Below, piece after piece: positions 1-34,860 of a stretch of DNA of 64,000 nucleotides. This DNA comes from Ylistrum balloti (lineage: Eukaryota). The number at the start of each line of letters is the position of its first letter. The first letter of the stretch is position 1. The position numbers and the translations under genes are program-made. The notes under the pieces were generated by a model, which saw only the letters and a program-made list of their open reading frames with translations, was not told where the DNA came from and ran no database searches. Where the stretch lies: NCBI RefSeq assembly GCF_031769215.1, contig NW_026782366.1, positions 1,364,001-1,428,000 on the forward strand, read 5' to 3'.

Positions 1-3000
1 AGGACCTGTACTGGTGAGTTCACCCTTGGCGTTGACTTTCAATTCTTCTGTGGTCATCATCCCAACACCCTTAAATAAAAGCAAGCGGAATTCATGTGTC
101 AAGGAATTATCGAATATGTTCCGCACTAACAAAAAAATTCCCTTTTAAAATGTCCGTGTTTTTGCAATCATTCCAAATCTTGAAATTTAATACGCACAAT
201 ATCTTGTAATTAATGTTGGACTGACTTCCTACCCAGCTCAAAATGAGGAACAGATATGTTTGGTGATGGACTATGAAGTATCCACACAAAGGAATGACTT
301 ACCTGGACGAAGCCTCCCTCAATTTGTCCGACGTCTATCGCTGGATTCAAACTCTTTCCTACATCCATTACGATATCGACCCTTACAACCTTAGAAATAA
401 ACAAAAGTGATATATGTTAGAATCACATACGTATTGTATGATTTACACTGTTCGAGTCAGAATTCCGATAAATTCTTACGTTTGTAATGAAGAAACTTAA
501 CGTATTCTTTATAATTACAATATCATTTATATAATCAAAAAGTTTCATGTCTTTATTTATTAATACCTGAGTTTTTCCTTATATAGAACAACAGACATTT
601 TACTGAAATTAATAAGGGGTGAAGTCAATTACATTTCTATGAGTTGATTAAATATTGAATTTACTCTTTATTCGTTGCCACTTTAAATAACGGTTAAAGA
701 CAAGCCTGTGAATAGTACTCAACCGAATATTAATTATGACAAATACGATAAATACATAAATGGTACTGAATGTACATATACATTTATCAGAGGTAACTGT
801 TTCAATATATAAGTCTTGATATCACCCGATAATCAGACACTACTACAGGAGATATTTCAGTTCATATTCATTCACAACGTACCTGGTGTTCTCCTGTAAG
901 AACATCGATCTCAACCTCAGTACAGGCACTTCCATAGGTGAAGTAGTGAGAGTGAGACCCACTATTCTTTTCATAGTCGTATCCCTCTTCACGAGGTCTA
1001 GACGTAATGATAAAAGGTTTGGCTTTGATATTTGTAAGGAAAGTTAATTTCCTGATAGTAGTGACTCAACTTTACTAGAGAATTGCATAGTTATACACAA
1101 CATGTAAATAATCAGAGGCATATGCATACCCATAGAATCCTGTTGCGGAAAGACTCACTCTTGAAAAGTAAGCAGCGGTCACCTGTTAAAATAAACTGAT
1201 TTCTATAGATAAAACTAACAACGGAATTTAGGTACTGACTTTTTCTCCCATGTAAGTCAGGCTAATTTCATGTGCATACACATTATACCGACATACCAAA
1301 CCAACAATTGTAAGCGAGTTCAAATCTTTGTGACTACTGACTTATCTTTGTACGTATTTAGGATAATAAATTCACATAGAACACTTATTTTATCCGTCTG
1401 CATCGTATATATGATACAATTACATCATCACAACCTCATTACAATACACATGTCATGAGAAACGGAAAGCTTACCCATGCGTTCCAGCCACCTTCAGGGT
1501 TTTTCTCTTTTATTGGAGCCAATCTATCCTTTATTTTCTTGCAGGCTTCCTTTAAACAGTATAAATTGAAAAGATTTTAATATTTGAGAGGAATTAAATT
1601 TCGTTGTATTCGAGGTCAATCAAGAAGTTAAATATCCAGCAAATATTTTCACGGGAAACGAAATCTGTTACACCTGTATACGTAAACACCAGTTCATATA
1701 CATGCGAACTTGCCCTGTGAACTTGTCCTAACCGCGACAATGTAGCTATGCCCATCTAGTTCCATTGTAGAGTGTATGGCTTCTAATTACTATTCAGTTT
1801 CAATGTTATTTCTATAGCGTTTAATGCCCATCTATTGCCAGTGTAGTGTTTATAGCGTCTAATTCCTATCTAGCTCAAGTATAGTGTTTATGGCATCTAA
1901 TGCCTATCTAGTTCCAATGTACTTTCTATAGAGTCTTATGCCCATCTAATGCCAGTATAGCTTTCTCAGCTCCAATGCCCATCTAGTGCCAGTGTAGCGT
2001 TTTTATGCCCGATGCCCATCTAATGCCTGTGTAGATTTTATACCGCCTAATGCCAATCTAGTGCCAGTGTAGTTTTTAACCACAACATGGTCATCTAGAG
2101 CCGGTGTAGTAGTTTTAGCGTCTGATGCCTATATAGTGCCAGTGTAGAGATTTTAGCGTCTGGCGCCTATATAGTGCCAGTGTAGTGTTTTTAGCGTCTG
2201 ATGCCTATATAGTGCCAGTGTAGAGATTTTAGCGTCTGGCGCCTATATAGTGTCAGTGTAGTGTTTTTAGCCTCTGATGCCTATATAGTGCCAGTGTAGT
2301 GATTTTAGCGTCTGATGCCTATATAGTGCCAGTGTAGTGTTTTTATCGTCTGATGCCTATATAGTGCAAGTGTACTTTCTATAGCGTCTAATGCCAATCT
2401 ATCGCCAGTGTAGTTTTTATAGCGTGTAAAACCAATACCTTCACACATTATTATTAATGACCGAAAATATCGGTTCAGCTTGACAAGTGCTATGTTTACC
2501 TGAAATACTACCTTTACGATAAGAGAGTTCCTATTAATGTTATAACGCGTGGTATAAAAAATTATATCATTATTGTCTATTTTATATTAGTGTACACCTG
2601 AACAAATAATTATTTGGACACACTACTCATACACATTTGTCTCAGAATACTAACCAACACCGCTCCTGCGTTCAAGTCGGCAGCATTACTCCCACCGGTT
2701 TCGGAAGTGTTTGGCGCCGTGGTTGTACTGGTCTCGCTGATGATAATCTTCTCGTGCGGAATTTCTAATGTTGATGCCGCTATCTGTGAATAATGTAAGA
2801 TTCGCTTCAATAATGATAACCAGGAACATCACTAACTAAAAAAAAAAAAAAAAAAAACTCAGCTTGCACGTCTTTATAAAATGAACAAAATATTATTCTG
2901 AGAAAAGCGAAATAGATCCCGCCCATCTAATTTCTCTTTTAAATACGTCAGTTTTCACGAGATATTCTCTTTTCTTAAAATCTATCGACAATGATCTGCA

Positions 3001-6000
3001 TAATAAGACATGGCATTACTTAATCGCAGTTGCAGAATCACATACTATTAATCATGGGTAAAGTATTTACCATCATAATAGCTTATCATATACCTGGATC
3101 ATTTTTGTGTGGAGTCCCTGTCCAAGTTCTACACCTGAATGGGCCAACAGCACTGATCCATCCTTGTAAACAAGAACCAAGGCTCCGGCCTGTGGCAACA
3201 AATATATTTACAGTTATAAATTGATTATGCCTTGCCCTGCTTTTCTGTTATTGGGCGACGCCTTCAACGTCCTTTATACATCACACTGTATTTCCAAATG
3301 CAGTTAAAATGAGGGTCTCACAGCGAAGGTTTTAATTCCAAATCAATATAAAAGTTACCCCCTGCGTAAAGAAAATGCACTACCATAGAAATGTTACATA
3401 AGATAGTGGATTGTAATGCGTATGTGTTTAGATCTTAATTGTCTTTGTACACATAATATTTTCCTTTATCAAGGAATTGCAATTGTACATTACCTAAAAC
3501 GAAGAAACAATTTGTAATGTATGTATAATAGTTGCTATGTTGGTATGTGTGATTGCAGCACTGGCAGAGTGAATGATGTTTGTAGAGAATGTGACCCTCC
3601 TCTGTGAGGTCATATTTTGTACTATAATGTTAATATCATTGTCAATAAAACGTTTGAAAAAAATATTAGCTTTTAAATTAGGTGTTATATTTTCAGATGA
3701 GTAGCAATTGATTTAAAACTCCGAGTAACGAAACCAACCCAATTCTTTTTCTTCGAGTTTTTACCTCGTTTCTTAACTAGTAAGGTATTGAATGAAAAGT
3801 GAACGGACAGACGCCGAGCCATAGTGTGAGGTTTGGACTGTCCGCCACAATGACTGATATATTATCTACTTCTCAGCCCGTACATTGTAGTTATCATTCC
3901 TCCCACTTGTAAACTTTGTTCACAAATATTTACATTATACAGTACTATATAAGATAATAGTGTTATTGTTATCAACATCAACTTCTTAATGTCAGTGAAA
4001 ATCAATATGAGAGACTGTCCCTGCATGAACTGACATTCACACTACCATCGCCAAAACACGATGACATAACATGTATCATAATCTATTTACAACTAATTTA
4101 CTGTAAAAGAAAGAAACCGAGTGACACTATTCGGAGATGAAATTACCTGATTAAGAAATAAAGGCGGATATCCGATCCCATACATACAGGGAACGATGGA
4201 AATTCCACGTTTCCTCCAACGATTAGCACTACAATTAAATATTTTTACCATTATACTATATAGATCTACAATAAGACTGTAATCTAATACATGAAAATTG
4301 ATCAATTTATTGTATTACATATACATTGTTTCTGTCCTATGTTTAAATGAAAGTTTTACTGAACAACTGTGCCAAAGTATTCAGTTTAACAATATATGAT
4401 AACTGAATTATTAAGTGACAATTCATACCCTGATATGTCAAACAACGAATAAAACTGCATTATTAAGCTATATCGTCACTTTCGAAAAACCAACATTAAT
4501 CCAATGAAGAAGTTTTGTCTTCTGATGAAGAATTCTAATCTACATACCTAACTGTTGGTGAAACGATGTGTATTATTGCAAAATACAGCATTAACACATA
4601 GTTGATTCATTAAATGCACAATACATTCTGAGGTAACCTGTTGTATGGCGCCAAGTATATAATTTGTTACTACTAGGAATTAACTTAATTGGGACTGTAT
4701 CCCGGGTCCCCGATTCAGCACATACCCAATCAGAAAAAAACAGACCTAATATCTATGTTATATCAAATATATATCATCCTAGTGCCATCGGGTAATGCGA
4801 TATAACATTTTGTGCTCATTCAAGTCTCTGACCTGTTGAATGCATGAATATTTTTGACACGTTTGTCGAATTCACTATCTTGTTTACACTCCTCCCAGCA
4901 GCGGTACAGGTTGTCGTCATTGATCGGCATGTTGAAAGGTGTCACATCACCTTTTCGTAGCATATTTGTGTCCCGTACCTAACAAAGATATCAGAATACA
5001 ACATATTATTGTACTTGGCTTCAAATTTAATATTGCATTGAGTGGAATAAATTCAAGGCCTGTTGAATGGGGTCAGTAGATGAACAACATATATGAGAGA
5101 CCCATTGCGTCTCATTAAGAGCAATTAGGGTATAGTGTTTTGCCTAAGCACAACACCGCGTAAGCACCGACCAGGTCATTTATCAGCTTCCTGAGACACA
5201 TAACCGCAAAGGGCACGGACATCAAAACTTAATTCTTACCTAAGGTTACGTAAAATGTAGGCAAACGTCCCACTATAGAGCCTTGGCGGCTCCAAATTAA
5301 AACAAAGTCACTACTGTGTGTAATGTAGGTCATACTGAACAATGTTTTGACACGCTCTCTAAGTAGTCTATTTGAATGGGAATCAATGTTGATAAGGTTG
5401 CATAATACGACAAAAAACTGAATATCAGTTTAGAAGCGGGGGAAATAGCACCACATAGACTTAATGATAAAACGTTTTGTGATGATACAATTACAAAATA
5501 GTGCATACTTGTTCAGCTTGTATGTTGAGATGGAAAGCCACTTTTTGTATCATCGCCTCGGCCACGAACATCACCTGCGGAGATCCAAATCCTCGGAAAG
5601 CAGTATTAGATGGCAAGTTGGTTCGGCAAAGCTTACCTTCAGCTTTCATATTGGTGAAAGTATAACATCCCTGTACCAGGAGCATACCGCATTTCATGAT
5701 CTATAAGCAGACAAATTTGTTATAACTTGTACAAGTTGGTGGGACTTTTTAGGAGCTTACTTCTAAAAGACAATAAACAATTCGCAAATGATCTTGAAAA
5801 GAACGGAATCAACACATACAAGCAAAATGATAATTCCATACAAGTGATATTATCCTAGATTGCAATTAGTACCATTCTCATTTGATAAATTCCCGACATT
5901 TGAAAGGACAGTGTTATTTGTTGAATTTTTTTAAAATGTATTGAAAGTTCGAATTTCAGAAAAATAGATTCAGTTGTCCACGACGTTACACGATGTACGA

Positions 6001-9000
6001 TGTGCACAGATGTCTGCACGCTGAGAAAAAATAGAAATATACACAAGTGTTGGATAGTGCAATTAATTATTTGAACATGAGTTTTATGATGACCGATCAA
6101 TTTTAATATGCCTGTAATCGCTATTGAGTCATAACTGCACGAGTCTTCCGATTAATTTTCAATATATACGCCAACAATAGGTACCAAACTACATAAAATG
6201 TGCGTCCATATCGCACAGTTGTGCGGTAGAAACTGTGTAGTGCTCGTGTGCGCACATCGTGCACGCATTGTAGCATGATTGGCACATGACTCACGCAAAA
6301 TGTGCACACAAAGGCTTTGATGCGTCGTGCTTTACCTCATCTATATATGTACATAGAGAACTTTATATTCATTTCCATGATTTATGAAATGACATCATTC
6401 TTTTCTTTTCTATAATCTGCAAATTAATCCTAAATTCCGTTAAAGCCGATGTAAAGAAATTTATTATGCTAGTTTTAAAATCCATGTTATTCATTTGTGA
6501 CCTCCCATGTTAATGAATTGTAAAGCTAGTTACGTCTACGTTAAGTACTTTAAGAATGTTTTAGCAATAGTGTTCGGACACTGATAGCACAAAAACTGAT
6601 AATAATACATTTTGACATTTTTAATCTTTGGAGGTCATCTTACCAACGGGCTAAGATCTGTTGAATACCCTGCATTGTAGTAGTACTTCACATCACACCC
6701 TACAATTCTTCCGTCTTTCTTAAAATACACCTGGAAATACAACATACCAATTAATCACACACACTAGTAAAGATAGATCAATATTACTCTTACTGTACTT
6801 ATATAGTAGACGTTTTTCATCATTCGTGGTATAATATACTATTATAGAGTGTATTATGTGTCAACCACTAAGGGGTTTGCTATAAAGATAAATAAATGGT
6901 ATCCAAAGCGCGATCCTTACATCTACAGCATCACTTACCTTGTACTTCGCTTCAATCGGATGTCTTTTGCCTGTTATTTTAAAATCAAGTTCTCGATCGT
7001 AGATGCATCTCACCGGCCGGTTTGTTCTTTAAAGTTTTAAAGTACAGTTTTACGTTCGCTGTATATGCACACGTATATCAAGTGAATTAACATTCATTCC
7101 AGTGTAGTTTTATGTATTTATTCACTAATTTAACACATTTTACTTCTTTCCCTGAACATTTCGAATTTTATATCAAATTGAGCATATTTATAAAATCTGA
7201 ATTGAAATATTAGCCAGAATGAACTTATTAGCGGGAAGAAAATCAATATTGTGTTTTCAATGAATGATTATTAATTCGACTTACTTCCATGCTCCGATAG
7301 CTGCTATACCCGAAGTTACTATTGAATCTGTAGCTTTTCCACCAAATCCACCACCTATAATGTCAAAATGTAAACTCATCGATGTTGTTGATGTTTCATT
7401 ATACCAGCATCCAACAAAATTGGTCAAATCCATTCATCAAGATGCATTTTAGCCATATCCTTATATATTTTTCTTGTTTAGATATGTAAAATATCATACG
7501 TATACGCAACAAGCAGATGGTCATTGAGTAGAAATGACATTACACTTACCTACACGCTTAACTCTGGATGAGATACGATTGCTATCTAATCCGAGAAATT
7601 TGGCGACATCTTCCTACACACCAAAAATATTTAAATGTACAGAAATAATGGTCTTAAGATTAAAGTACAATTTTAAGTCGGGCATTATTGTTCTTTTGCT
7701 GATTCAAGTTCTTCATGATTTCATTGTATACAACTAATGATAAGAAGAACTAGGCCATCATTCGGTTTCATGGTGCCCTCATGGTAAAAATAGTTGTTGG
7801 TATAGTGTCATAGTTCATGGTAACAAATTAAGCCCGGCTGCTATCACTGCTTTGTAATCCATCAAAGGAAAAAAAAATTCTTCAATTCGAAAGTTGGTCA
7901 TTGTCATTAAGTGGAAACAAAGTTCTCTTTCACAATATGCTACAGACCAAACACACGGGTTCTTTGTTCTTTTCCTAATAAATCTAAAACTTTCATTGCA
8001 ATGAAAAGTCGGAAGGAGTCATGATGGCAGTAAAAATTGAATCGAAATGTTGTACTTTGCATGCCTTTGAACTACCGAAGGATTAACAATAACTGGTAAA
8101 CATAATGCAGAACTATAAAGTTCTGAATCTGATTTAAATCTACGCTTGGATGTGAATACTAACCTATTTCTAGCTGAAATTGTCAACAAAAGTTGTGATG
8201 ACCATGTGTTTATATCAACGTTGGTAGTCACAGAATCTGTTACCTGTAATTGCGTGACACCTTGTGTGGAAGTGATAATGTCAAGTTCGTTCTGTTCCTT
8301 CCTAGGGATGACCAGGGAGGAATGGGGTTCCATATACAAATGTTCCTGGGCCCCTGTCTCACACACTCCTTCCAACACAAAATCTGCTTCCTTCTCTGCC
8401 TCCTCCATACATCCACGCTCCACTTTGTAAGCATGTCCAAAAAACTGTTCTTTCATGATGGCATCCTGTAAGATCAAAGATAAATACCGTGCTCGTTAAC
8501 CACTCTTTGGTTTTGTAATGTTTCGGTATCATAATCGATTAAGCAATTGATAAATAACATCAAGCTTACTTAAAAAGGGGGTGAAAACCATAATGGTATG
8601 AATTTACAAATAAGTGAAATATAATAATTAGTATGCTAATGTACACGCAATATCAACAGATATATCATTATTTTTGTGTTTTATCTTCAGTAAAATTGTA
8701 TCGTTTCTGTATGTAAAAAATATATTTCTATGTGTGTTATTTTGGCATGTTTGTTGAGCAGTTATTAAGTTTGTCGAATCCTACTTGGATTGATATTGTT
8801 GCTTCTAAGGGTTCGTATTTAACTTCCACCAGTTTGACAGCACGGTTCGCAATTTCTCTGGACTCTGCTAGAATGACACAAATCGCCTGGCCATGGTAAG
8901 ATACCTAGATTGATAACAAAATAGAACATAAGTATCATTTGTGATAATACAAAGACATACATAAATATACAAATGCCATACCGGTTTTCATTTCAACAGT

Positions 9001-12000
9001 GTAATTTCACTGAAATTTAACGTAGTACGCATATTCTCTTTACATTCTTCACCATTAATACCGACTCAGTGTTCCCTTCATGCATCATATGGCAAAGGAC
9101 TAATTACACAGATAACAAAACAGGATAAAATTCTTTGTTGAACATTACTAACATATTTCGTCCATTCAAAAATATGGGAACCAAACACATTGCAAAATTA
9201 CGTAGATTAAGACATAAAACGGATAGAAAAAAAAAAACAACAAGAAATAAACAAACGTGTACTCTTCATAACACTACACAAGACTTACAGTACATTTAGA
9301 TATTTTAGCACCTTTTACCATCGGCAGTATGGAATGAGTAGGTGAACATTCATCTCAATAATCACGGCAATGACACGATAGAAACTAACGGGAAAGTGTG
9401 AAAAATTATATCCGTAGCGTGTCCCTATCACGTCATAATTGTTGTCATATCAGCGGTCCGCCGTACAAATAGTTTTCTCATATAATTGATTACAATGTCA
9501 GTAGTAAAAATCTATTTTGTAGTTTAAATAACATCAAAACATACATAAATTTTAGAGAAGATATAAACAAGTAAATGGCTTGGTAAGTGATTTATGCCCA
9601 ATTTGAATGACATACTTTGCAGGCATACAAATATGTCATAAGTAAAAGGTTTAACTCTTCAATAACATTTCACATACCTCATCCTGACATAAAAGAACAT
9701 TGTCTGGCACTAGGAAACCGTAATTATTGTCGCAAGGAATATCCTTGTAGTCTATGTAGTCAATTACTCCTTCCATTTCCAATGCTGCCGACACGTCCAC
9801 CGATAGAATCTTTGCATGAGCATGTGTACTGGTAACAAGTCCAGCAAACAGTTCGTCTAAACATCACACAAAAACATTTTAGCATATATATATAAGCACT
9901 AGTCTCAAAATGTAATGTTCTAAAATCATAAAATGCTAGAAAGAAAAATTGAATATGATTTTAAATATCAAACCACTTATCAGTTTCACTATGGTATATA
10001 ATATATAATACTATATACTTGTAGCGCTTGGGATATCGTCAACGAACTGCGCTTCTCCAGCAGCAATGTATCCTGACGTCACATTAGGTATAGGTTTCCA
10101 TACGGCTTTGGTATCACTTTCGTCTGGAATATCGTATACTTGGATACCGGACGTGGGTATGTGCGACAACCCTGCAGGGAACTCGGAACAACCCGTCTGA
10201 AAATGGAATGTCCATGTTTTAAAAAAAAGTTCTTTTGATCTTTTCATGTTCAAACAGATTTAGATTGGAATTTAAATTAACTGAATAATAGTTACCTCTA
10301 GTTCCGCTTTTATCTTCATGAAGAATTTCAGGAAGAAGCTACAAGCTAGTGTAGTTCTGAAAGGTATATTGGTATATGCTGTGCTTTGCAGTTCAATCAT
10401 CAGGGCGTCGTTGACTTTCTCTAACATGTCTTCGTTCCAAGATCTCAAAAAAATAACACATGATTATAGCGAGCTTTAATCCTTAACCAAACGAAATATT
10501 GATTGTCGTATGAAATATTTTTACCTTTTGATAGCCACGTTTACTGCCCTCGTGGCTAGTACTGGTTTGTCGTCAGTGCCACCAAATGCCAACCTCATAT
10601 TCTGAACCACTGTAGTCCCTTTTTCGAACTGAACGTACAATCCTGTGGTTACGACTCCATAGTCAAATCCACGACGATTTGGTTGTTTTAATCCCGACAT
10701 ATGTTCGTCCTAAAAAAGGATGCAAGTGCCTCTACCATTTATTCACAACTTTCAAGATCTAACATTTTGACAGCATCAATTCCAACATTCGTCCGTAAGA
10801 TAAGATTGGCTACACATAAAATATAGCGATCATGATATCAATAACGAAAAAAAATTATGGAAACATTTTGTTCCCATCAAACAAATTGTTGAATGAAAGG
10901 GATAGGCAATGAAATTTGGAGTAAGTATTGAATAGTTATTAAATTGATTTGAAATATGAGTTAATCTCTCATCGATATAATTATGAACATTAACGCAAAT
11001 ACAGTTTGTGCCTACTTTTCATATGTTCCGTGAAATCATCAGGACCGCATATCATGAATATCGTTTTAATCGCTGATATATTCAACTGCATGGGCATTGA
11101 TGCCATAAGATATATGCGTACCACGGTTATTGATATACTCATGAGTTGTACGTACATCTGACAACAGAGGAACCCGAATAGAAACCAATATCTGGTCCTG
11201 ATAAACATTATTTTTGGCGCTGTGTACGAAATCATTGTCCATCGGTACCTCCTGTACACCTGCAACAGGCATCGCATTTGAAAATCACATGCTCGGATAT
11301 ATCTTAAGTGCAGAAAGCAAATAATTTGATTACAATGTCATCAAACATCAAAATCAAATGAGTTAATTTACACTTTTAAAACGCTATTTCGATATTGACA
11401 TAAATACCTCCATTCATTTTCCTGAATTCGAGAACTGCCCCGGCAGCCATGAAGAAAGTTTGCATGTCTAGGTTTGGGATCTTGCTCATCACATGACCGC
11501 CCAGTGTCTAGGAAATTAGAATAATATATTTCAAGAGGTAAACATGCAAAAATATATCATATAATATTCAAATACATCAACTGCCTTCACCGGAAACATA
11601 GAAAACCTGTCTGTGTACAGGGAGACTTACAGCTGTGTTTTTTATTTGATCCGCCGCAACCCATCGCAAAACGTCCAACATTGCAGAAATGGTCTTGTTT
11701 GCTGAAATACAATCGTGAAGATTTATACTCATGCATTTTTAGCTCGCTTTCACACGACACCATCCTGAATGATTAACATTTTTAGGTTTCTCATTATTAT
11801 AAACTTTCTCCTAATTTGAAAATATCATTTTCTTTAAGGTGGAAAATAACGCTGTATTGTGGCATTTGATTGATTGGAATTTAAAGAATGTTTGCTTTCT
11901 ATGAACTTAGTAGCTATGTAATGACACTGCAACAACACTTCCTAAAATGGTTTCTGGGTGAAAATATGATTAGTTGAAACTAATGAATATTACGTCTTTC

Positions 12001-15000
12001 TGATCACCCTCGGCTGATGAGAAAATAATTACATTTCACGGCTAAAAGCTCTGATTCTAGTTGTCCCATGGTAACTCCAGCACCAATCCTGATTTCAGAA
12101 GACGTGAATTGCACACATTGCAGTTCCGGTAGGTGGGTACAGCAGATAATCACATTAGAAGTCATTGCCCCCTTTCGTAGCAGGTAACCTAAGATAAGAC
12201 GGAAAGGGACAATGACATGCTCATATATGCTTTCATATACGTATTGCCTTTTACTGATTGTTTTATAGCCCTTTCCTGAATGCATTGTAATTTTTCCCGG
12301 AGGTCAATTTTGCGCGGATTTATTAAAAACTTGATGTCAAATGGATTTTAAAACCGGAAGTTATGAAACGGACAATTTACCTGTTTGAACCTTTATTATC
12401 GATCTCATTTTGATACAAGGCCTGAAAATATTAATATAAACAGCATTTGAAAGTAACAACTATCACTGTCTCTGTATGATTAATTCGCAATACACAGAAA
12501 AAGCATTCTTAACGCATTGTGCCACTTAATTCAATCACAATTCTGTGTTGTAATATTGCATTTCTGAACACTTTTCAGCTGTATTCAGAAAATATTGATC
12601 AATTAATAAGCTTCTCTTCTGCTTCGCGTAAGCATTTATCACTCACCAATTGTATTACAACCAAGGACAAACTGGGCTTTCGGGAAGTTTGTCAGGAGTC
12701 TGAGAGCCTCTTCAACTGTTGTTGGTCGATACCAAGTGTATTTGCTACTTTTAAACGTCATAAACTTAGTGTGGTAGGCCGAGTTTAACTGGAACACATT
12801 AGAAATAAACCTGACTTTACGGACAAAAACTCGGTTTTCCGATTCTGTTTCTTTCTGCCAATTAATTATCAGATCCATCATTTTCGTTCCAGTTTTGTTA
12901 TTTCTTTGATAAGAATTATATCAGATTAGACATAACCTTATAAGTTTGAGTCAGATTGAGAGGTTTTCAAAACTAAAGTATTTTTTCGATCAATTTATGA
13001 AATCAATAAATTCAAATATCATCGCTAGAGCTGCCTTGCCATGCGATAGTGACTATTCCAGCGAAGAGGATAATAAAAGACATTTGTTCTGGGTTTAATG
13101 TAACATAAATGCATTCCACACCAGTTTAAAAAAGTAGGTTGTATCAGCATTTTCAGTTAATCGGGAAGATTCGTCATTTCCCTCCTACAAAAATGGTTTT
13201 ACGTAAAATTCGCTATTTTACTCCATCACCGAAAAGTAAACAAATAGTATAATAATAAAGGCAAAATGCAAAGAACATAAACAAAATATCGGAGTTAATT
13301 TTCATTGTCTTCGCTGAATGTTCTGTTAATCAGGATTTAAGTGAAAACTAAAAAGTATAGCCCAATACAAATCATTTTAAAAGAAACAACTTCTAAAGGG
13401 GTGATATGTGATACCGGTCATCACTACCACGACTGTATTTGTCGATTATACAAGAAATATAGACACAACGGGATGTGCATTACAATTTGAAAAATTATAA
13501 GAATGAATAACCATGCAATATCAGCGTACATTAATTAGCTGTTTATATATATATATATATAGTAAAGTTCCACAGCCATGCGCATTTGTATCACTTTGTA
13601 TAGGAAGGAACATATATAATCATGCCATCAACAAATAAAAACAAAACACAAATACGTAGATAAGTGCTTACAGCTGTTTCAAATCATCCTTTTCATCTTC
13701 TTTTACATACATGCTTATTAATAGTGGTACTTTATCATCCTATACAAATCTGGAATCAGTTCAAACGAATACCTCAAACAATATGAAGGCGATGATATTT
13801 CAGTGGATAAAGCAAAGGGCAATTAAACCTCAAGTGATTATCCATGGATTGCACAAGGTTCGAGCTATCACTACCAGAGGCATATTTGTCGTCCTGGTGG
13901 CCATTTTAACCTACATACTTTGCATAGCTTACGACAGGCATCCAACATGTTGTTCGGTGAGAAAACAGTCAGCTACTCTACGGAATTCTCGCCTCAACCT
14001 ACAGATTATCATGGCGGTTGACAAGGAACTCTCATCAAAATGAAAATATTATAAGCAACTTAGTATCGGCCATATTTACGATATTTAAAATATTGACATC
14101 ATTATCTATAATTAATTATAAAATCAAAACACACAAAGATTGCTCCTAACATGAACTATCAATGATATGTAATTATTGAAATGAAATCCGTCAAACACAA
14201 TCCTGTGTTTTGTTTTACCTGTAATTCCGGTGGAAAGATGACATCTTGTGTCGTCGCGCTCTTCGGTTCATCATTTGATTTCTCATCCTGGTCTCTTGTT
14301 TCTGTCCTGTCCGATTCCTCAAGACAAAGCCCCAGTCCACAAGGACAATTCTACAATATTCATCGTTTTTGCCATCAAGTCAGTAATGTAAATAAACTGA
14401 AATCTTACACGAGTTTTTGAGGCCATCATGAAATCTTTGTGCTGTCTTGCTTTATATTGTTTAGATAACTCGTAATGAAACAGAAACATGTAGATTACAG
14501 TATGCAAATATTAGAGACAGCTACTTTAAAATGATAACCAAACTCCTATACATTAGATGGATAGAGAGACACTGATGCTACATCAATACGACAAAATCAT
14601 TTTGACCTCTATGAAAAGCGATTAAAACTAGCACTTCCTGTGAAATGTTGAAAGTGTAATAGAAAAATATATTGATAGTTACAGTACCATAGAGCTCGAA
14701 ATTCACTCCCACTCAATAGCAGACATAATTGTGTATACAATAAATAAACTGACCATCTTAATAGACCTGGAGGTGTTTACAATAGGTCTATTACCTCTTT
14801 GGAAGACCTAATGGTGTCTACATTATGTCTACATACCTCTTTAGCAGACCTAAAGGCATCTACAATAGGTCTATATCCTGTACATCGACAAAGATTTCCT
14901 GCAAATCGAAATGCGTAGTTACATAAGATCAATTATAAGATGCAACATTCTGTTGTTGTTCCTTGTGAAACACAACAAACTTTCTGTTCTAAAAGGATTC

Positions 15001-18000
15001 GCATTCACATATATCTTTCATTGGATCTTTATTTATTTCACACACCTTCAAGAGCTCTCTCCATTTGCTGTTGCGTAGGGTTCGGATTATTTCTGAACAA
15101 TGTATACATTGTCATCACCATCCCCGGGGTACAGAATCCGCACTGAAGGCCATGAGACTCGACGAGACTTTCCTAAACATTTAAATATAGATAATTTACT
15201 TCTGTGTTTAATATATCAATATAAACAATTCTTGTACATTTAGATGTATTTTGTAAAAGATATACATATTTTTAGTAAATTGTCGCACAATAAAATAATA
15301 GGACGAGATATGTTCTGAACGGATAGGTGTCACACGGCAATTTCATATTTGACATGACTACTTCGTCTTGAATAAATTAGTCACAAATTCGAAAAGTTGC
15401 TGCAGGAAGGCCTTCTAAAAGCTTCAAAAGATATACCTGCATGTATGGTTTTGACGCCGATAGTAAGTAACCTACTTATCATATAATATTGATTTACAAC
15501 GGACTTACCTGCACGGGATGGAGACCGTTGCGCGTACTGCCAACACCTTCCACAGTGGTGACTGCCATTCCGTGGAGGTAACATAATGGAATCAGACAGG
15601 CATTCACTGAAATGTTTCTGTAAGCGCAGAGTATATCAAATCGTTATATATCTTATTGTAATGAACGTAAATTTTTCTCCATATCAAAAGTAATTCCTTC
15701 GTAATAGAGATACGTGTCTCTTCAATTAATGATTTCTTTACCTGATTTTCTTTGTAGTGATGTTTAAGTAAGAGACCATGACGGTACATGCCCCGCATGC
15801 CCCCTGTCCACATGCCAGTTTGGTACCTGTTAGATATACTGGTTCCACCATAAAGGATAAACAAGATTCTTTAAATAATATATACGTAAATCATAATACA
15901 GCATTTTAAGTGTATGAACGACCAATATATAACGCACTCTATAATAATAGTGATCATCCAGGTGTTTTCCGTTAAAGCTGGCGAATAAGTATTGACCTTG
16001 AGTGACTTCAATTCATATTTCGTGTTAATCAGCTGTGACGAACATGAATAATTGAGAAGGATGTGTGAACAAATTTCAGGAAGAAAAAGGATACGTGATC
16101 TACGCAGGTACTGTAAAAGTGTCAATTCCGGATCCGGTTCCAAGATTCGAACCTTAATAGAAAGAAATGTCGGTTATCATTATCACCAATGGACTTGATA
16201 TAATTTATGTAGAATCGATTCATGTTATATGTTTCCACTGGAAAGTCATTTCCAACTAGCTACAATGAACAACTGTAAGCATATGTTAATAATTTCCCAA
16301 TTCAGAGCAGATCAATAGGTTTTTTTCTATTAGCAAACGTTTTGTGATTATCTATGTTTTATGCATCAAAGGTCATACCTAACGTGATAATGTGTATTTG
16401 TTATTATCAGAGCAATTTTTTTTTTGTTCATCCAACATTTTAACTTCCAAGTTACCTACATGATCGACTTGACTGACTTATCCGTAACTTATATTCTGTT
16501 AGCTATAGCCATCCTTGTGGAAATCTTCAATAAAATAAATTCATATGTGTGTGGTTTTTTGGTTTTGGGTTTTTTTCCCTCGGTAAAGTACCGATTTTTT
16601 CATCATTTACATCCAGAATGACGGTTAACTCATTCATGTGACCGCAAAGATGTGTTACTGCATTTAATTTATACTCGTGATTTGAAATAAAGCATGTAGT
16701 GTGAATATCTACTGTCATATACATCGCTATATTTATCAGAATGATACGTTATCAGTAGATAATTTAATCAGAGACGACCATACTATGAATTGTCTGGTAA
16801 TGTGAGTAGGTGACTCTGCCATACATGATTTTTATATGTAATATTCAACGTATAAAGAGTTATTGGTATATATACTTAAATATGATAACAAGAAGCTATT
16901 AGCCCTCAAGGATATATCGAGTGGCTGCGACTTTACACCCCAGTTAGATACGAATAGAACGTAGTAAGGTAGAATCATCAGAAAATGATTTTTTACTAAT
17001 CAAGATAAAGTTTTAGAGCTGGAAGTGTTCAATACAAAGTCAGTTTTCCTAACACTGTACCTCTAGTAAGCTGTTTTTATGTATTTGTTCTTATGCATTT
17101 CTTCCCCGTTTTTTTTGTTTTTTCTTTTGTTTGTTTTTATAGTAATTAGGTAATGTTCATCAAATCACCTCTACTGACATTATCCTATCTATACGGTCAC
17201 CGTAGATGCTTTTAATTGTCATTATTTCACAGTTGTGGTATTTAGTGTCTCGGTTAAGGGAAACAAAAACAAAAAACCAAGATGAAACAAAACTTTTTTT
17301 AACGCTGAAACGGAACTGAAATTAAAGATATATGGATGAGGTACGAAATACGATTTAAATTTGAATTAATGATATTTGTAATGCATATCTGATATTCAAA
17401 GTTCTTATTGACAGTGAAGATTTATTACATAAAACGTTATAGATCACGTATAATGCTTTTCCCGGATGCAACCTAGATATACGACATGGCTGTCATTCTT
17501 TACGTTCCTTTGTGAGAATGTAGAGTTAAATAGCACAAGACGAAAAGTTGTACTTGCTTATCATATGGTAAAACTTAATAAACACAATCGGTCATCTGAC
17601 AATCGATGGATGGAAGGACAAACTTGAGAATTTGTAGATGGTGGTCTGACAAATCTAATGAACCCCCAGAATAATAATTCTGACCACATTTGGTATAAAT
17701 CCATTCATGCATTATCATTGACTAACTTTCCAATTTAGGGCCCCATCCCCAGATTCCTAGGGGTTGAATCAATTTTCTGAATTTTTGGAAATGTTAAGCC
17801 ACCCACAAGGACGTTTCGGACTAAGTTGGGTTGAAATGCATTCAGTCATTCAGGAAGAGTAGCGCTTTGAAGCAAAATATTTAAGGCCCCGTTCCCAAGT
17901 CCTTACAGGTCGATTCAATTTTCCGAATCAATGAAATGATAACTCATTTGCAACAATATTTCAGATCAAATTTTGTTGAAATCTACACATGCATTAAGAA

Positions 18001-19347
18001 GAAGTGGCGTTTTCAAGCATTAAGGAAGAGTTCCCCTTTTAAAGTCCTGGCACTATTGAGTCCCTTGGGGTCAAATCAACGTCATGAATTCAAGAAATGA
18101 TTCCCTATCCACAATGATATTTCATACCATATTTGGTTTAAATCCATTCAAGCTTAAAGGAAGAATAGCGTTTTGAAGCAAAATATTGACTAACGTCCCC
18201 ATTTGGGGCCCCGCCTCCAGTTTCCTTTGGTAGAATCAACTTTCTGAATTTAGGAAATGATAACCCGCCTGTACCAACATTCCGGATCAAATTTGGTTGA
18301 AATATATCCAGGCATTAAGGAGAAGCAGCGTTTTTGAAGAAAAATATTGACTAACTTCTCCTTTGTGCCCCGTTCCCAAGTCCCTAGGAGCCGAATCATC
18401 ATTCTGAATTATAAAAAATGATTATCCATCCTCAATGATGACTAAGACCACATTTGGTTAAAATTTGCCCGGCGTTTAGAAGGAGTAGTGTTTAGGAATA
18501 GTTTACTGAAGGCGAACGGCTCATGTATTGTTATGCACTATAACTTAGCTTTCAAATTCCTTGTCCTGTTTAACATCAGTCTATGGCTAATAAGGTACAT
18601 ATAGGTATATATGATAATGCATAGTGTGACCGAGGTCACATTTTGGAGTGCTGATAGAAACATTAAAATGCTTGAAAAGTCCATGTTTATGCATCAAGTC
18701 TACCAAATAAGTATGTCCCTTTGACATGGACATGCCACGAGAGAGTGCTTGATTTAAGCCCTGTATTAACAACATTGATCCAAATGAACATGCTGTAAAA
18801 ATAGACTCTTGTGTTTTTTTTTACCATATCATCTACAATTCAAATCATTTAGGGTAGTTGCGTATGTACCTGACTACATGTATATATCCATAGGTATTGA
18901 TCTGGAACATGGCAATTGATATCAGAATTTTTGCATTGTAAGCTTTAAAATTGAATGTACCGTGTCCTCCATGATATTAAATGTGATATATTAGTGTTGT
19001 TATCTTTTATGACGTCGGGGACAAAACAACTGTGTACATGACTATTTTGTGGAATATAATGGTCTTGATATGAAGGCTAAAGTTTTTTGTGTTGATTTTC
19101 TTCCAGTCGATTAAGATGCAGATTTTGTTTCCAGTATATAACCAGATATATCAGAACGTTAATTTGCCCATATTGATAGACGATGAAATGAGCACGCTAA
19201 TATTATTAATTAATAGATTTTACACTCTGACATGTCAAGCAAACAATGAGAAACAATTGTATAAAAATCAAACTATGAAATAGTAAGAGCGTGTGTAAAT
19301 ACCTTTTTGCCGTTAACGAAGAACACAAGTAAATCTGTAGAATCCAT
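1..19347 (-). CDS. Xanthine dehydrogenase/aldehyde oxidase family molybdo-flavoenzyme (XDH-like gene, AOX-type residues); 3' end lies outside the window
   Basis: 32 exons with GT-AG borders and matching phases: 19347-19303, 16152-16095, 15838-15742, 15617-15509, 15172-15046, 14898-14837, 14350-14219, 12788-12647, 12188-12033, 11701-11631, 11507-11408, 11259-11156, 10709-10525, 10443-10296, 10196-10019, 9856-9678, 8904-8785, 8465-8244, 7613-7550, 7354-7285, 7026-6939, 6730-6644, 5700-5509, 4978-4833, 4228-4147, 3189-3094, 2783-2655, 1549-1475, 1182-1130, 997-883, 389-303, 69-<1 (1196 codons in window). Family motifs: [45 protein letters not shown] (two 2Fe-2S centres); IGAGVT and TLGGH (FAD domain); [58 protein letters not shown] (Moco domain). 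Confidence 0.96.
1741..2425. repeat. Minisatellite, ~38-bp unit, in XDH/AOX intron
   Basis: Tandem copies of atagtgccagtgtag(a/t)g(a/t)ttttagcgtctg(a/g)(t/c)gcctat. Core copies at 2100-2400 are nearly identical and the left copies are degenerate. Confidence 0.95.
3500..3665 (+). mobile_element. Probable 3' tail of a LINE/SINE
   Basis: Small stem-loop tgaccctcctctgtgaggtca, then aataaa and an A-rich tail (tcaataaaacgtttgaaaaaaa). Same layout as the 3' end of the LINE at 31179-31230. Confidence 0.4.
5060..5300 (-). mobile_element. SINE copy with a conserved central domain (Meta-like, from recall)
   Basis: Minus strand reads ...gttgtgcttaggcaaaacactataccctaattgctc..., resembling the gtgtccttgggcaagacactttaccctaattgctc SINE core. 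A related copy lies at 44772-45030. Confidence 0.5.
17600..18560. mobile_element. HINE-like non-autonomous element with ~6 degenerate ~140-165-bp internal repeats
   Basis: Recurring unit catttggtt(g/t)aaat...aaggaagaag(t/c)agcgttttgaag...ggcccc...gaatcaa at about 17690, 17825, 17970, 18130, 18293 and 18452. Lies in XDH/AOX intron 1. Confidence 0.7.
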
Positions 19348-26834: not shown

Positions 26835-28460
26835 ATGCCAGCAAAACACTGCTGGGACATGTAACAGTGATTCGAGGTATGTGGGCAAAAGGCCTGACGC
26901 ATTGAAAGATGTTTTTTTTTTCATTCCTTTTCAAAACCGAAAACACAGCTTTCAAAATGTGAACGATGGGTGAGAGTTGTGGTCGAAAATTTTTCACTGT
27001 AGACGACGTCCATAAAGAAACATACATATGTTTTTGGTAATGGGCCTACAGATTCGCATCCTGATACTTTACCAGCCGTATCCACGGAATTAGAGAGAAA
27101 TTTATTGTCAAATAAGAAGAGAAAGCCCCCTGTTAATAGATCTGTACAAAGGGAGAGAACCCCCAGCTTGCAAAGAAACGGAAACTGTTTGAAGACAACA
27201 ACGACGATGAATCGCAGTTCACATTCGTAAAAGATCACGCATACTGCCGTCCTCAAACTGGTCATATTGATGATGGAGACAGTGAAAACCAGGATGTTAA
27301 ATGCATGTAGCCGTCTAAATCGGTTAGATGCATTAAGTGAAACCTTCAGGGTTTTAAAAGGGATTACGCTTCGCTCCGCCCCTTTCAAAACCCTGAAGAT
27401 TTCACTTAATACAATCTCACCTTTACATAGGAATTTAAGACGTTGTTTAACTTTTTGAATAATACTGGTCGCAATTTGCTTACCAGAGAGAACTTTATCG
27501 ATCACGAAACCAAGCTATTGAACTGAATATTGGGGTCAAGTTTGGTGCCTGTGGCAATCTCAAGAAAAATGTTCCTCGTGGAATTGATCTATACTATTCG
27601 TTGGGCCAAAGAAAATGTTCCACATTTTTATCGAGATGTAAGGATAATATGTTGTCCTTCAGCCAATCGTGACAGGTTTCTTAAACTTCGGAGAGTTTTG
27701 TTGAAATAATATCCATATTTTGATGAAAAAAGATGATGACACTAGTCTGTTATCAACATATAATAAAGGTCTGTATGATAAGTCAATACTAATTTTCATA
27801 TAATTAACATATGAAGACGGGCAATAAATCTTTATTGAGGAACTCCACAACGTACGTTACCGATAGATGACTTAACGTCGTTAATGTTAACCCACTGAGT
27901 TCTGTTTTTAAGATATGGTTTTAAGCATATTATCGATTCAACACCATTAATACTTTTTCTTCTTCTTTTTAATTTCAGCATGTTTTCTTGTCATGATTTT
28001 ACTGACAGAAGGAATTTGGCAACAGACATCGCCTCTACAAATATACACATCGGTCAAATAACGAATGAATACAGTGATAAATACTAAATACTAATTAATT
28101 TTCCTGACTCCATTAACTTTTGAAAAACGACGTGCACTGGTGTTTGGTACTGGTTGTGTAACAGAAAAGATGAGTTTTACCATTCAGACATAATTTCTAG
28201 GGGAAATCTGGTAATATATATTTCAGTTCTTGTTAGTGGAACATTGAAAAGTCTATTACGACGAAGAGGATATTGGTCAGTATTATTATAAGAAAAAAAC
28301 AGTATTAAAATATTTTGATAAAAGTGACGATGTTTCAAAAGGGGAAGTAAACCAGATTCTTTGTATAAGAAATTGTGACTTGTTTTCTAGTCTCAGGCCG
28401 GTAATTAAGAGTATTGTCTCAAGTTGGATTGACTTCACGGTACGTTCGGTACTATATCTG
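26835..28460 (+). mobile_element. Decayed THAP-domain DNA transposon remnant (ISL2EU/Harbinger-like), interrupted by a CR1 fragment
   Basis: Frameshifted peptide MPAKHC(W)..CNSDSRY..VFFFIPF..KCERWVR.CGRK..TYIC..GNGPTDSHPD (THAP-type C-C-C pattern) at 26835-27310. Downstream VSQA..IKSIVSSWIDF (28385-28440) resembles the HTH preceding DDE_Tnp_4 transposases. Confidence 0.65.
27415..27870 (-). mobile_element. CR1-like LINE reverse transcriptase fragment
   Basis: Minus-strand peptides YVNYMKISIDLSYRPLLYVDN (degenerate YVND..LLYADD), ETCHDWLKDNILSLHLDK and DKVLSGKQIATSIIQKVKQRLKFL. Confidence 0.75.
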
Positions 28461-28949
28461 CACATTCTGACACTAGACGAATGAATGTAGTATAAATTCC
28501 AATACTACTTAATTTGTAATACAGAATTGAATAATACATCACTTTTACTTAATTTACTTCCTAAAGCTAGACTCTGAAAGTTATAATAATTATTTAACTT
28601 TCAGTCCTACCCTTTATACATTAAAAGATGGCCCCGCGGCAGAATTCCACATAGCCCATTGTTACGATGGTAATTAATGACTGGACACAGATTAAAGTGT
28701 AGCTGCGCACTGACAGCCATGATGTTTCATCGACAACGATGATTGGACGTCGTTTGATGTTCGCCGCCACCACTGCGGTAATAGCATATAGTGAGGTCTA
28801 ATTTACGGAATCATGAAAATATACGGATATATCTTGAACTCGTGATAGCCACTTTAATGATGCCGTTAATTATTTCTGTTAAAGTTGTTTTTGTTTCATA
28901 ACTGGAAAAAGAAAGGTTTTATTGATAAACATATTTCTTTGATTTTATT

Positions 28950-31170: not shown

Positions 31171-31178
31171 TGGTGATA

Positions 31179-34100: not shown

Positions 34101-34860
34101 GTCTCTGCCATTCAGTATCCTCAGACCTGTAGCTTTACACAAATTCAATAATCTTGTACCATATTCATTGCGGACATTGTCTGGGTTAATACGTTTATCC
34201 ATAATAACATCATTTTCATAATTAAAAAAAGTTACGTACATTTTGTTTCAAATTTTTAACCAAATCATCGTTTTCAATAAAGTCATCATCGTTTCGAGTT
34301 CTGCTATTAAAATCTCCAATCAAAATGACCTCACCCAAGTTTGAGTACTCGGCTATACGGAGGTTTCAATTTCAAAAAATAAATCACAATTATATTTTGC
34401 ATAATAATTTTATCTACTGGGCGGGATATAAACTCCTGCCATAAAGACATCTTTACTGTGTTCAAACATTACTTTGTCTAATCTTAACCATACAACTGGA
34501 TCATACAAAATTTTATCAACTGAAATATACTCCTTGTATTTTTCTCGTATTAAAACAACGATACCACCCCCTTGTGTATGATTTGACAATGTTCTTGGTA
34601 TACACATAGAATAGAAACCATTAATATCTAAGTTATAATCATTCGGTATCCAACATAGTTTGTAAATACTGGATCAGTTATTTTTGTACATAGACCTCCA
34701 TTGACATTCCATGATATTATCCGTAATTTACCATTCTCTGCGTGATCCTATTTACTGTCATCTGTAGTACGTTTGCCCGGCCCTTTGGAAGGTACTGATG
34801 ATGGTGATCGTACGGGTTGGTATGTTTTTGAGAGTTTTCCATGATACCCATACCTCAAGA
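31179..34860 (-). mobile_element. Younger APE-RT non-LTR retrotransposon (CR1/L2/RTE-X group), ORF2 nearly complete but disabled
   Basis: EN: KLRIISWNVNGG, GGGIVVLI, MSTIDYLI, SDHAPL. RT: PNNYRGISLLS, QFGFR, FVDYKKAFDSV, AQGEILSP, LLMYADD, YLGI. C-terminal RICRICNSEDIEDEYHFLFICP zinc knuckle. Stops at 33417-33419 and 32480-32482, a frameshift at the G7 run 33315-33321. 3' end has a tgagct-gtaa-agctca hairpin, AATAAA and a (tgaatt)-like tail. Confidence 0.93.

What the first reader, a model, noticed from the sequence alone, without database searches (positions are those of the whole stretch)
1..12788. XDH-family gene with aldehyde-oxidase-type active site: candidate independent invertebrate AOX
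Seen: [43 protein letters not shown] and [10 protein letters not shown]. Known (bovine numbering, from recall): XDH has GGGFGGKETRS (E802), SIMERALF (R880), SLGGNII, the NAD-related FF..YRK motif, GISFTV (F1009/T1010) and TAASVS. Vertebrate AOX has GGH and GGS and lacks E802/R880. Both purine-binding residues are therefore replaced (E to A, R to C) and the NAD motif is lost, while the Fe-S cysteines and AFRGFG are intact. Inference: an oxidase with non-purine substrates that converged on vertebrate AOX signatures, with an unusual Cys at position 880. The catalytic E1261 lies outside the window.
Basis: partly seen in the sequence, partly recalled or inferred. Interest (0 to 1): 0.7.

Follow-up and report, generated by a model that had tools for sequence, protein, structure and literature searches.

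The report
Scallop aldehyde-oxidase-like XDH paralogue
This is an intact scallop gene of the xanthine dehydrogenase family that has lost the residues needed to bind purines and NAD+, so it most likely works as an aldehyde-oxidase-type enzyme; it belongs to a bivalve-wide group of such copies that arose separately from vertebrate aldehyde oxidases, and its substrate is unknown.

Summary
The window comes from the scallop Ylistrum balloti. Its minus strand carries a 34-exon gene, from window 19347 to 1.9 kb before the window start. Its spliced translation equals RefSeq XP_060077182.1, "xanthine dehydrogenase/oxidase-like", 1287 aa.

Against bovine XDH numbering:
- Kept: all eight Fe-S cysteines, Q767, F914 and the catalytic E1261 (E1261 lies 355 bp outside the window).
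- Changed: E802 to Ala, R880 to Cys, H884 to Leu.
- The NAD+ site is degraded: E263T, Y393A, P501A.

A canonical XDH lies on another contig (C1085), with matching intron positions. The genome holds at least eight non-canonical copies. This gene falls in a well-supported clade of scallop, oyster, mussel, pearl-oyster, unionid and Solemya proteins. Vertebrate AOX branches with vertebrate XDH instead, and a joint clade is rejected (AU p = 0.003).

However, it is one member of a large, automatically annotated family. Cys880 is not conserved even in the orthologues. The Lys that vertebrate AOX enzymes share at this site is absent. Activity and expression in this species are untested. The relation to insect AOX could not be tested. 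I rate it a new member of a known kind, of moderate-to-low interest.

The parts
1..19347 (-). In-window part of the AOX-like gene. It covers coding exons 1-32 of 34. Exon 32 runs on to 98 bp before the window; exon 33 lies 355-522 bp before it and exon 34 lies 1897-1905 bp before it.
   Evidence: Exact threading of P0161 on window plus upstream DNA. All 33 introns are GT-AG, and the CDS is 3864 nt = 1287 aa plus stop.
14837..15838 (-). Exons 3-6: the two [2Fe-2S] domains with all eight cysteines (bovine C43, 48, 51, 73, 113, 116, 148, 150).
   Evidence: Pfam Fer2 and Fer2_2.
15839..16094 (-). Intron 2, with a U12-type donor GTATCCTT.
   Evidence: The canonical XDH gene has the same intron position and the same donor type.
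11408..11507 (-). Exon 11: FAD-domain segment TLGGHVM (bovine N351 to His).
11156..11259 (-). Exon 12: DFVHSAKNN, where bovine Y393 is Ala and R394 is Lys (lost NAD+ contact).
8244..8465 (-). Exon 18: start of the Moco-binding domain, with Q767 kept.
7285..7354 (-). Exon 20: [10 protein letters not shown], with Ala at bovine E802.
   Evidence: Unchanged in a second DNA data set.
5509..5700 (-). Exon 23: IMKCGML with Cys at bovine R880 and Leu at H884; AFRGFG with F914 kept.
   Evidence: Unchanged in a second DNA data set.
4147..4228 (-). Exon 25: GIGYPPLF (bovine F1009 to Tyr, T1010 to Pro).
2655..2783 (-). Exon 27: [10 protein letters not shown] (bovine A1078-A1079 to Gly-Gly, as in mouse AOX1).

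Best explanation
The gene encodes a functional molybdo-flavoenzyme of the XDH/AOX family that no longer oxidises purines and no longer uses NAD+.

Shown:
- An intact 34-exon open reading frame.
- The complete seven-domain architecture: two [2Fe-2S] domains, the FAD domain and the Moco domains.
- Conserved Q767, F914 and the catalytic base E1261.
- Replacement of the two purine-orienting residues (E802A, R880C).
- Degradation of the NAD+ site (E263T, Y393A, R394K, P501A, and E428-D429 changed to Gly-Phe).

Inferred mechanism: a substrate carbon (an aldehyde or an aza-heterocycle) is hydroxylated at Mo-OH, which the Glu activates. Electrons then pass through the two Fe-S clusters to FAD and on to O2, as in aldehyde oxidases.

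Origin: the gene arose by DNA-level duplication of an XDH gene in the molluscan or bivalve lineage, separately from vertebrate AOX. It belongs to a clade that has multiplied in bivalves and whose pocket residues differ from copy to copy. That pattern suggests broad or shifting small-molecule (dietary or xenobiotic) substrates.
For: Gene model and identity:
- The gene model is exact and equals XP_060077182.1 of Ylistrum balloti.
- All seven Pfam domains are matched over nearly their full profile length.
- Key residues were read from a numbered alignment and from HMMER alignments to solved structures.
- PMC3864932 states that E802 and R880 are the main substrate-binding residues of bovine XOR, that they are Ala/Val and Tyr/Met in AOX enzymes, and that introducing the XOR residues into mouse AOX3 was needed to obtain hypoxanthine turnover.

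Paralogues and origin:
- A canonical XDH (E802, R880, H884, F1009, T1010, Y393, R394) is encoded on contig C1085.
- 30 of 33 intron positions coincide with that gene, including a U12-type intron.
- A site-heterogeneous tree gives a bivalve non-canonical clade of 23 rows (SH-aLRT 99), with this gene nested in a scallop subclade (100). Vertebrate AOX is sister to vertebrate XDH (99).
- The AU test rejects a joint clade of bivalve AOX-like and vertebrate AOX (p = 0.0027).
- The slowest member of the clade (Solemya) has bivalve and chiton XDHs as its best full-length matches, apart from three over-long fused models.

Constraint and expression:
- The Pecten orthologue is 77% identical with the same length.
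- The Argopecten-cluster orthologue occurs as six 4.2-4.4 kb Logan contigs, four encoding 1285 aa and two 1201 aa. Contigs that short must lack the introns.
- All 17 substitutions and 3 indel sites between the window and a second DNA data set are intronic, although exons make up 19% of the span. The chance of that is about 0.03 by my arithmetic.
Against: - No enzyme assay exists for this protein or for any member of its clade.
- No RNA data for this species were available.
- The electron acceptor is inferred only from lost NAD+ contacts. The list of NAD+ contacts is from my recall of the bovine XDH-NADH structure.
- The R335-W336-R427 cluster that stabilises the dehydrogenase form of mammalian XDH is kept, so high O2 reactivity is not assured.
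- The Lys that vertebrate AOX enzymes use at bovine position 884 is Leu here.
- Where the clade attaches to the XDH tree is unresolved. Under LG+G4, grouping with bivalve XDH alone is rejected (p = 0.009) and grouping with mollusc XDH is borderline (p = 0.05).
Confidence: 0.8

Rival explanations
1. It is still a xanthine dehydrogenase or oxidase acting on purines, as its database name suggests.
For: - Its best matches among solved structures are bovine, rat and human XDH (about 1183-1200 bits), above mouse AOX3 (1072), human AOX1 (about 1040) and Drosophila AOX1 (536).
- RefSeq names it XDH/XO-like.
Against: - E802, R880, H884 and T1010 are all replaced. These residues bind and orient purines (PMC3864932).
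- A fully canonical XDH exists on C1085.
- The NAD+ tyrosine is lost.
Confidence: 0.03
2. It is a decaying or non-functional duplicate (pseudogene in the making).
For: - The pocket residues differ even between close orthologues (A/C, S/S, A/A at positions 802/880).
- No RNA data exist for this species.
Against: - There are 34 exons without a stop or frameshift, and all splice sites are GT-AG.
- The catalytic and cofactor residues are kept.
- It is 77% identical to the Pecten orthologue, with the same length.
- Orthologue transcripts exist in Argopecten-cluster data.
- Polymorphisms are confined to introns.
Confidence: 0.05
3. It is a Mo-hydroxylase that hands electrons to an acceptor other than O2, acting as a dehydrogenase with another partner, so 'oxidase' is the wrong label.
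For: The R335, W336 and R427 cluster of the XDH form is kept, and the FAD loop differs from both XDH and vertebrate AOX ([12 protein letters not shown]).
Against: - Eukaryotic family members that lack the NAD+ site and have been characterised use O2 (my knowledge of vertebrate, insect and plant AOX).
- No partner gene is evident next to it in the window.
Confidence: 0.12
4. It shares a single ancient origin with an already described AOX family (vertebrate or insect) and is not an independent offshoot.
For: - It shares Ala/Val-type 802, GGH and GGS signatures with vertebrate AOX.
- In fungus-rooted trees the clade falls outside all animal XDHs.
Against: - A joint clade with vertebrate AOX is rejected.
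- It scores 1117 bits on the mammalian AOX model TIGR02969, against a cut-off of 1912. That is lower than the scallop's own XDH (1477).
- It scores only 536 bits against Drosophila AOX1, compared with 1199 against bovine XDH.
- No non-bivalve member was found in three large searches.
- Insect AOX sequences could not be put in the tree.
Confidence: 0.05

Closest known systems
Vertebrate aldehyde oxidases (AOX1-4; structures 4UHW human AOX1, 3ZYV mouse AOX3)
   Same: - Same seven-domain homologous architecture.
- Q767, F914 and E1261 equivalents are kept.
- E802 is replaced by a small apolar residue and R880 by a non-basic one.
- N351 is His (GGH) and A1078-A1079 are Gly-rich (GGS).
- The NAD+ tyrosine is lost.
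   Different: - Separate origin.
- Fails the TIGR02969 cut-off.
- Leu instead of the conserved Lys at bovine 884.
- Tyr-Pro-Pro instead of the vertebrate residues at 1009-1011.
- Keeps W336 and R427, which vertebrate AOX changed.
Canonical xanthine dehydrogenase (bovine XDH 1FO4; the scallop's own XDH on contig C1085)
   Same: - 45% identity to Bos XDH and 42% to the scallop XDH model.
- The same intron positions, including a U12-type intron.
- The same cofactor-binding residues.
   Different: The purine-binding residues E802, R880, H884 and T1010 and the NAD+ contacts E263, Y393 and P501 are replaced.
Insect aldehyde oxidases (Drosophila AOX1-4; structure 7PX0)
   Same: Invertebrate XDH-derived paralogues in multi-copy families with differing substrate ranges and unclear in vivo substrates (PMC5817353).
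   Different: - Only weak similarity (536 bits).
- The phylogenetic relation was not tested here because no insect AOX sequence could be fetched.
Fungal nicotinate hydroxylase HxnS
   Same: An XDH paralogue re-purposed to a non-purine heterocycle (PMC5746545).
   Different: The fungal duplication is proposed to be by retroposition with new introns. Here the intron positions are kept, as that paper says is the rule in Metazoa.

Membership tests
XDH/AOX molybdo-flavoenzyme family (eukaryotic single-chain type) | Domain order Fer2, Fer2_2, FAD_binding_5, CO_deh_flav_C, Ald_Xan_dh_C, MoCoBD_1, MoCoBD_2 | tested here: met
   All seven Pfam families score above their cut-offs and are matched over nearly their full profile length.
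XDH/AOX molybdo-flavoenzyme family (eukaryotic single-chain type) | Eight Fe-S cysteines, plus Gln767, Phe914 and the catalytic Glu1261 | tested here: met
   Glu1261 lies 355 bp before the window.
Canonical xanthine dehydrogenase | Purine-binding Glu802 and Arg880 (with His884 and Thr1010) | tested here: not met
   Ala, Cys, Leu and Pro respectively.
Canonical xanthine dehydrogenase | NAD+ site (Tyr393-Arg394, Glu263, Pro501) | tested here: not met
   Ala-Lys, Thr and Ala respectively. The list of contacts is from my recall of the bovine XDH-NADH structure.
Canonical xanthine dehydrogenase | Xanthine:NAD+ activity | not testable with these tools
   Needs an enzyme assay.
Vertebrate aldehyde oxidase (TIGR02969 mam_aldehyde_ox) | Score at or above the curated cut-off of 1912.3 bits | tested here: not met
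   P0161 scores 1116.8 bits. The scallop XDH scores 1477 and a caecilian AOX scores 2066.6.
Vertebrate aldehyde oxidase (TIGR02969 mam_aldehyde_ox) | Common descent with vertebrate AOX | tested here: not met
   Vertebrate AOX is sister to vertebrate XDH. A joint clade is rejected at AU p = 0.0027.
Vertebrate aldehyde oxidase (TIGR02969 mam_aldehyde_ox) | Conserved active-site Lys (mouse AOX3 K889) at bovine position 884 | tested here: not met
   Leu here; Lys in all four vertebrate AOX rows. Its role is described in PMC3864932.
Insect aldehyde oxidases | Common descent with the insect AOX clade | not tested
   No insect AOX sequence was obtainable. The only evidence is a weak similarity to Drosophila AOX1.
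Bivalve non-canonical XDH-like clade (defined here) | Placement inside the supported clade, with non-canonical residues at 880 and 393 | tested here: met
   SH-aLRT is 99 for the clade and 100 for the scallop subclade. Every listed member lacks Arg880 and Tyr393. Residue 802 is non-Glu in most members but is still Glu in the Solemya, P0171 and P0194-type rows.

The most novel reading that the evidence does not exclude
Bivalves evolved their own aldehyde-oxidase-like branch of molybdenum hydroxylases and multiplied it. This scallop has at least eight non-canonical copies, and the branch has members in scallops, oysters, mussels, pearl oysters, unionids and Solemya. It converged on several vertebrate AOX signatures (Ala/Ser/Gln/Gly at 802, GGH, GGS, lost NAD+ tyrosine) but has a pocket that varies from copy to copy. 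On this reading, filter feeders carry an undescribed phase-I system for dietary or algal aldehydes and N-heterocycles.
Probability: 0.45. Interest if true: 0.5.

Novelty: new member of a known kind. Interest (0 to 1): 0.3.

Why it matters
Independent births of aldehyde oxidases from XDH are known in vertebrates, insects and plants, so one more case is not surprising in kind. It gives a replicate of that transition in which some changes recur (residue 802, GGH, GGS, loss of Tyr393) and others do not (Lys884, the W336 cluster). That helps separate the changes needed for an AOX-type enzyme from lineage accidents. Six full-text searches aimed at the topic found no paper describing the bivalve clade. 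Databases label all its members "xanthine dehydrogenase/oxidase-like", which can mislead studies of purine metabolism, pigmentation or proteomics in shellfish. The size and pocket diversity of the family suggest a role in handling dietary or environmental small molecules, which matters for shellfish toxicology. That role is untested.

Tried and rejected
**Steps that failed or were closed**
- Expression in this species: the run search found no RNA run, only one DNA data set. Laying it showed a contig spanning introns and exons alike, so it says nothing on expression.
The transcript nature of the Logan contigs rests on their lengths alone.
- The treekit AU test under the site-heterogeneous model did not finish in four runs. 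I replaced it with IQ-TREE LG+G4 on 37 rows. That model is more prone to long-branch effects.
- Pocket modelling was not done. The protein (1287 aa) exceeds the 1200-aa limit of structure prediction, and a sub-range of it has no reference.
- Insect AOX sequences could not be fetched. The two long insect hits (P0159, P0275) turned out to be fused tandem XDH-like models at 51-61% identity to Bos XDH.
- Reviews by Garattini and Terao and the Drosophila AOX paper were not held.

**How the spliced model was handled**
- It was never typed into a tool. Exons were searched by reference.
- Whole-protein searches used the database protein P0161, which a script showed to equal the spliced translation.

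**Ideas rejected**
- A canonical paralogue next door: there is no other family hit on contig C509.
- Cys880 as a special catalytic or metal ligand like the Cys of Mo-Cu CO dehydrogenase: by my recall that Cys sits in the loop equivalent to AFRGFG, not at position 880. Residue 880 is also not conserved among orthologues.
Full report
**Source and gene model**

The window is contig C509:1364001-1428000 of a 648-Mb assembly. A search with the closest full-length relative returned a protein named "xanthine dehydrogenase/oxidase-like [Ylistrum balloti]" (P0161, XP_060077182.1, 1287 aa). Its contig length, 2,186,502 bp, equals that of C509.

tblastn of P0161 against the window plus 20 kb upstream gave matches at or near 100% along the minus strand. 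Exact threading resolved 34 coding exons with GT-AG introns throughout:
- The start codon is at window 19347.
- Exon 32 crosses window base 1.
- Exon 33 lies 355-522 bp before the window.
- A 9-nt last coding exon lies about 1.9 kb before the window.

The region contains no N. The gene is therefore already annotated. The finding's range 1-12788 covers exons 8-32.

**Check of the observation**

Two of them, [11 protein letters not shown] and LIMKCGML, straddle splice junctions. HMMER alignments of single exons to solved structures put Ala opposite human residue 803 (bovine E802). They put Cys opposite human 881 (bovine R880).

I checked the numbering of a Bos XDH sequence: Q767, E802, R880, F914, F1009, T1010, E1261, Y393, C535 and C992 all fall at the expected places. 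In the alignment numbered on it, the scallop protein shows:
- Q767 kept
- A802, C880, L884
- F914 kept
- Y1009, P1010, P1011
- E1261 kept
- A393, K394
- all eight Fe-S cysteines kept

The Fe-S cysteines are at 14.8-15.8 kb, outside the stated range.

**What else changed**

In the FAD domain:
- The NTE of XDH (E263) reads CNT.
- GGN (N351) reads GGH.
- The loop QASRREDDIAKV reads [12 protein letters not shown].
- PGGM (P501) reads AYTN.

R335, W336 and R427, which I recall as stabilising the dehydrogenase form of mammalian XDH, are kept. At the Moco site TAAS reads TGGS.

The Lys that all four vertebrate AOX rows have at bovine position 884 is Leu here. PMC3864932 describes that Lys as substrate-binding in AOX.

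**Paralogues**

A Pfam MoCoBD_1 search of the whole genome found family exons on these contigs:
- C1085
- C47
- C162 (two genes)
- C509 (this gene only)
- C62
- C864
- C15
- C226
- C1327 (a 13-kb contig)

The protein on C1085 (P0252) has every canonical XDH residue. The others do not:
- C162: Q802 with Ile or Val at 880.
- C62 and C15: E802 with N880.
- C47: Lys at 880.
- C864: a similar exon, but the alignment starts after position 880.
- C226: a divergent copy without the AFRGFG motif.

There is no canonical copy "nearby", but there is one in the genome. Thirty of the 33 intron positions of this gene coincide with exon edges of the C1085 gene. The three misses fall where my C1085 model was incomplete, or in a variable stretch. 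Intron 2 has a U12-type donor GTATCCTT in both genes. The duplication was therefore at the DNA level. PMC5746545 says this is the rule for metazoan XDH-like duplications.

**Relatives and phylogeny**

Hits by identity to P0161:

| Relative | Identity |
|---|---|
| Pecten maximus | 77% |
| A cluster containing Argopecten irradians | 73% |
| Other scallop paralogues | 56-57% |
| Oyster, mussel and pearl-oyster proteins | 47-50% |
| Canonical XDHs of many phyla | 44-45% |

A PMSF LG+C20 tree of 63 rows gives these groupings:
- A clade of 23 bivalve non-canonical proteins (SH-aLRT 99). It includes Solemya and a unionid.
- This gene in a scallop subclade (SH-aLRT 100).
- All canonical XDHs, bivalve ones included, in the other part of the tree.
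- Vertebrate AOX as sister to vertebrate XDH (SH-aLRT 99).

An LG+G4 tree of 37 rows agrees. AU tests on that set gave:

| Constrained clade | AU p | Outcome |
|---|---|---|
| Bivalve clade + vertebrate AOX | 0.0027 | rejected |
| Bivalve clade + bivalve XDH only | 0.009 | rejected |
| Bivalve clade + mollusc XDH | 0.0525 | not rejected |

The rows I left out were fragments, fused models and near-duplicates; they are named in the scripts.

The fungal outgroup is a long branch, so the apparent position of the clade outside all animal XDHs is not trustworthy. The least diverged member (Solemya) has bivalve and chiton XDHs as its best matches, apart from three over-long fused models. It found no non-bivalve member of the clade. 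I conclude an origin in the molluscan or bivalve lineage, before the split of protobranch and autobranch bivalves, with fast early divergence. The exact node is open.

**Membership**

The protein meets the architecture and cofactor criteria of the XDH/AOX family. It fails the defining residues of XDH.

It also fails membership of the vertebrate AOX family:
- It scores 1117 bits against a 1912-bit cut-off on TIGR02969. That is lower than the scallop's own XDH (1477), while a caecilian AOX passes with 2067.
- The tree test excludes common descent.

Against solved structures it scores as follows:

| Structure | Bits |
|---|---|
| Bovine XDH | 1199 |
| Mouse AOX3 | 1072 |
| Human AOX1 | 1040 |
| Drosophila AOX1 | 536 |

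It therefore works like an AOX by inference, but it is not a member of a described AOX family.

**Is it functional?**

Evidence for function:
- The reading frame, splice sites and catalytic residues are intact.
- The Pecten orthologue has the same length at 77% identity.
- The Argopecten-cluster orthologue is present as six Logan contigs of 4.2-4.4 kb, four encoding 1285 aa and two 1201 aa. Contigs that short cannot hold the 33 introns, so they are transcripts by inference.
- A second DNA data set differs from the window at 17 substitutions and 3 indel sites between 3039 and 8600. All are in introns, although exons make up 1047 of 5562 bases. The chance of that is about 0.03 by my arithmetic.
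- The codons for A802 and C880 are unchanged in that data set.

Evidence lacking:
- No RNA run of this species was available.
- One proteomic paper lists an unrelated accession, "xanthine dehydrogenase-like" of 146 kDa, among proteins recovered in a CdS precipitation experiment on Mizuhopecten (PMC12357810). I could not tell which paralogue that is.

**Mechanism**

Shown: all parts of the electron path Mo, two [2Fe-2S] clusters and FAD are present, together with the base Glu.

From established knowledge of the family: the substrate carbon is attacked by Mo-OH, hydride goes to Mo=S, and electrons flow to FAD.

Inferred:
- Purines are not substrates, because Glu802 and Arg880 are gone (roles per PMC3864932).
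- NAD+ is not the acceptor, because Tyr393, Glu263 and Pro501 are gone.
- O2 is the likely acceptor.

The retained W336 and R427 cluster leaves room for a different acceptor, which I list as a rival. Residue 880 is Cys, Ser or Ala in the three orthologues and takes many other residues across the clade. The Cys is therefore not a special feature.

**Literature**

Six full-text searches aimed at the topic combined aldehyde oxidase or xanthine dehydrogenase with terms for bivalves, molluscs, invertebrates, insects and gene duplication. They found no description of this clade. The main reviews of AOX evolution are not in the library. I therefore cannot exclude that they list molluscan genes.

**Verdict**

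The finding is an already annotated member of a large, uncharacterised bivalve family. It is not a unique enzyme.

Noticed in passing
window 15839-16094 (minus strand); G000:C1085 about 28117-31300: Intron 2 of this gene has a U12-type donor GTATCCTTTT and a TCCTTTAT box about 17 nt before the AG. The intron at the same protein position of the canonical XDH gene also starts GTATCCTTAA, with TCCTTAC near its 3' end. A minor-spliceosome intron seems to have survived the duplication.
   Followed up: partly
G000:C1327 (13,326 bp); L033:3489-7799 minus strand: An intronless 1437-aa XDH-like ORF sits beside a PLD-like ORF and other long ORFs on a small contig of 36% GC. The XDH-like ORF matches all seven Pfam domains (the hammerhead domain just under its cut-off) and is about 30% identical to animal XDHs. 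The dense intronless coding suggests DNA of another organism, or a transferred or retroposed block.
   Followed up: partly
G000:C1085:37376-37702 (P0252 aa 213-321): The RefSeq model of the canonical XDH is 1458 aa because of an extra 109-aa exon. That exon matches more than 25 other contigs at 70-79% identity, so it is probably a repeat-derived exon or an annotation artefact.
   Followed up: partly
window 31325-34241 (minus strand): A LINE-like retroelement with three consecutive ORFs. One matches RVT_1 and one matches, weakly, an endonuclease-reverse transcriptase domain. Further RT-like ORF fragments lie at about 24.6-29.8 kb.
   Followed up: partly
window 42022-42429 (plus strand): An ORF whose end matches the first 25 positions of an RNA recognition motif, after a Lys-rich stretch. 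It is probably an exon of an RNA-binding protein gene.
   Followed up: no
G000:C226:2427283-2427474 and 2438516-2438623: The most divergent family copy reads NTAARSPGS where all the others have NTAFRGFG, so the conserved Phe914 is lost. It may be a decayed or strongly re-purposed paralogue.
   Followed up: no
window 3039-8600: A public DNA data set of the same species differs at 17 single bases and 3 indel sites, all of them intronic. It comes from another haplotype or individual.
   Followed up: yes
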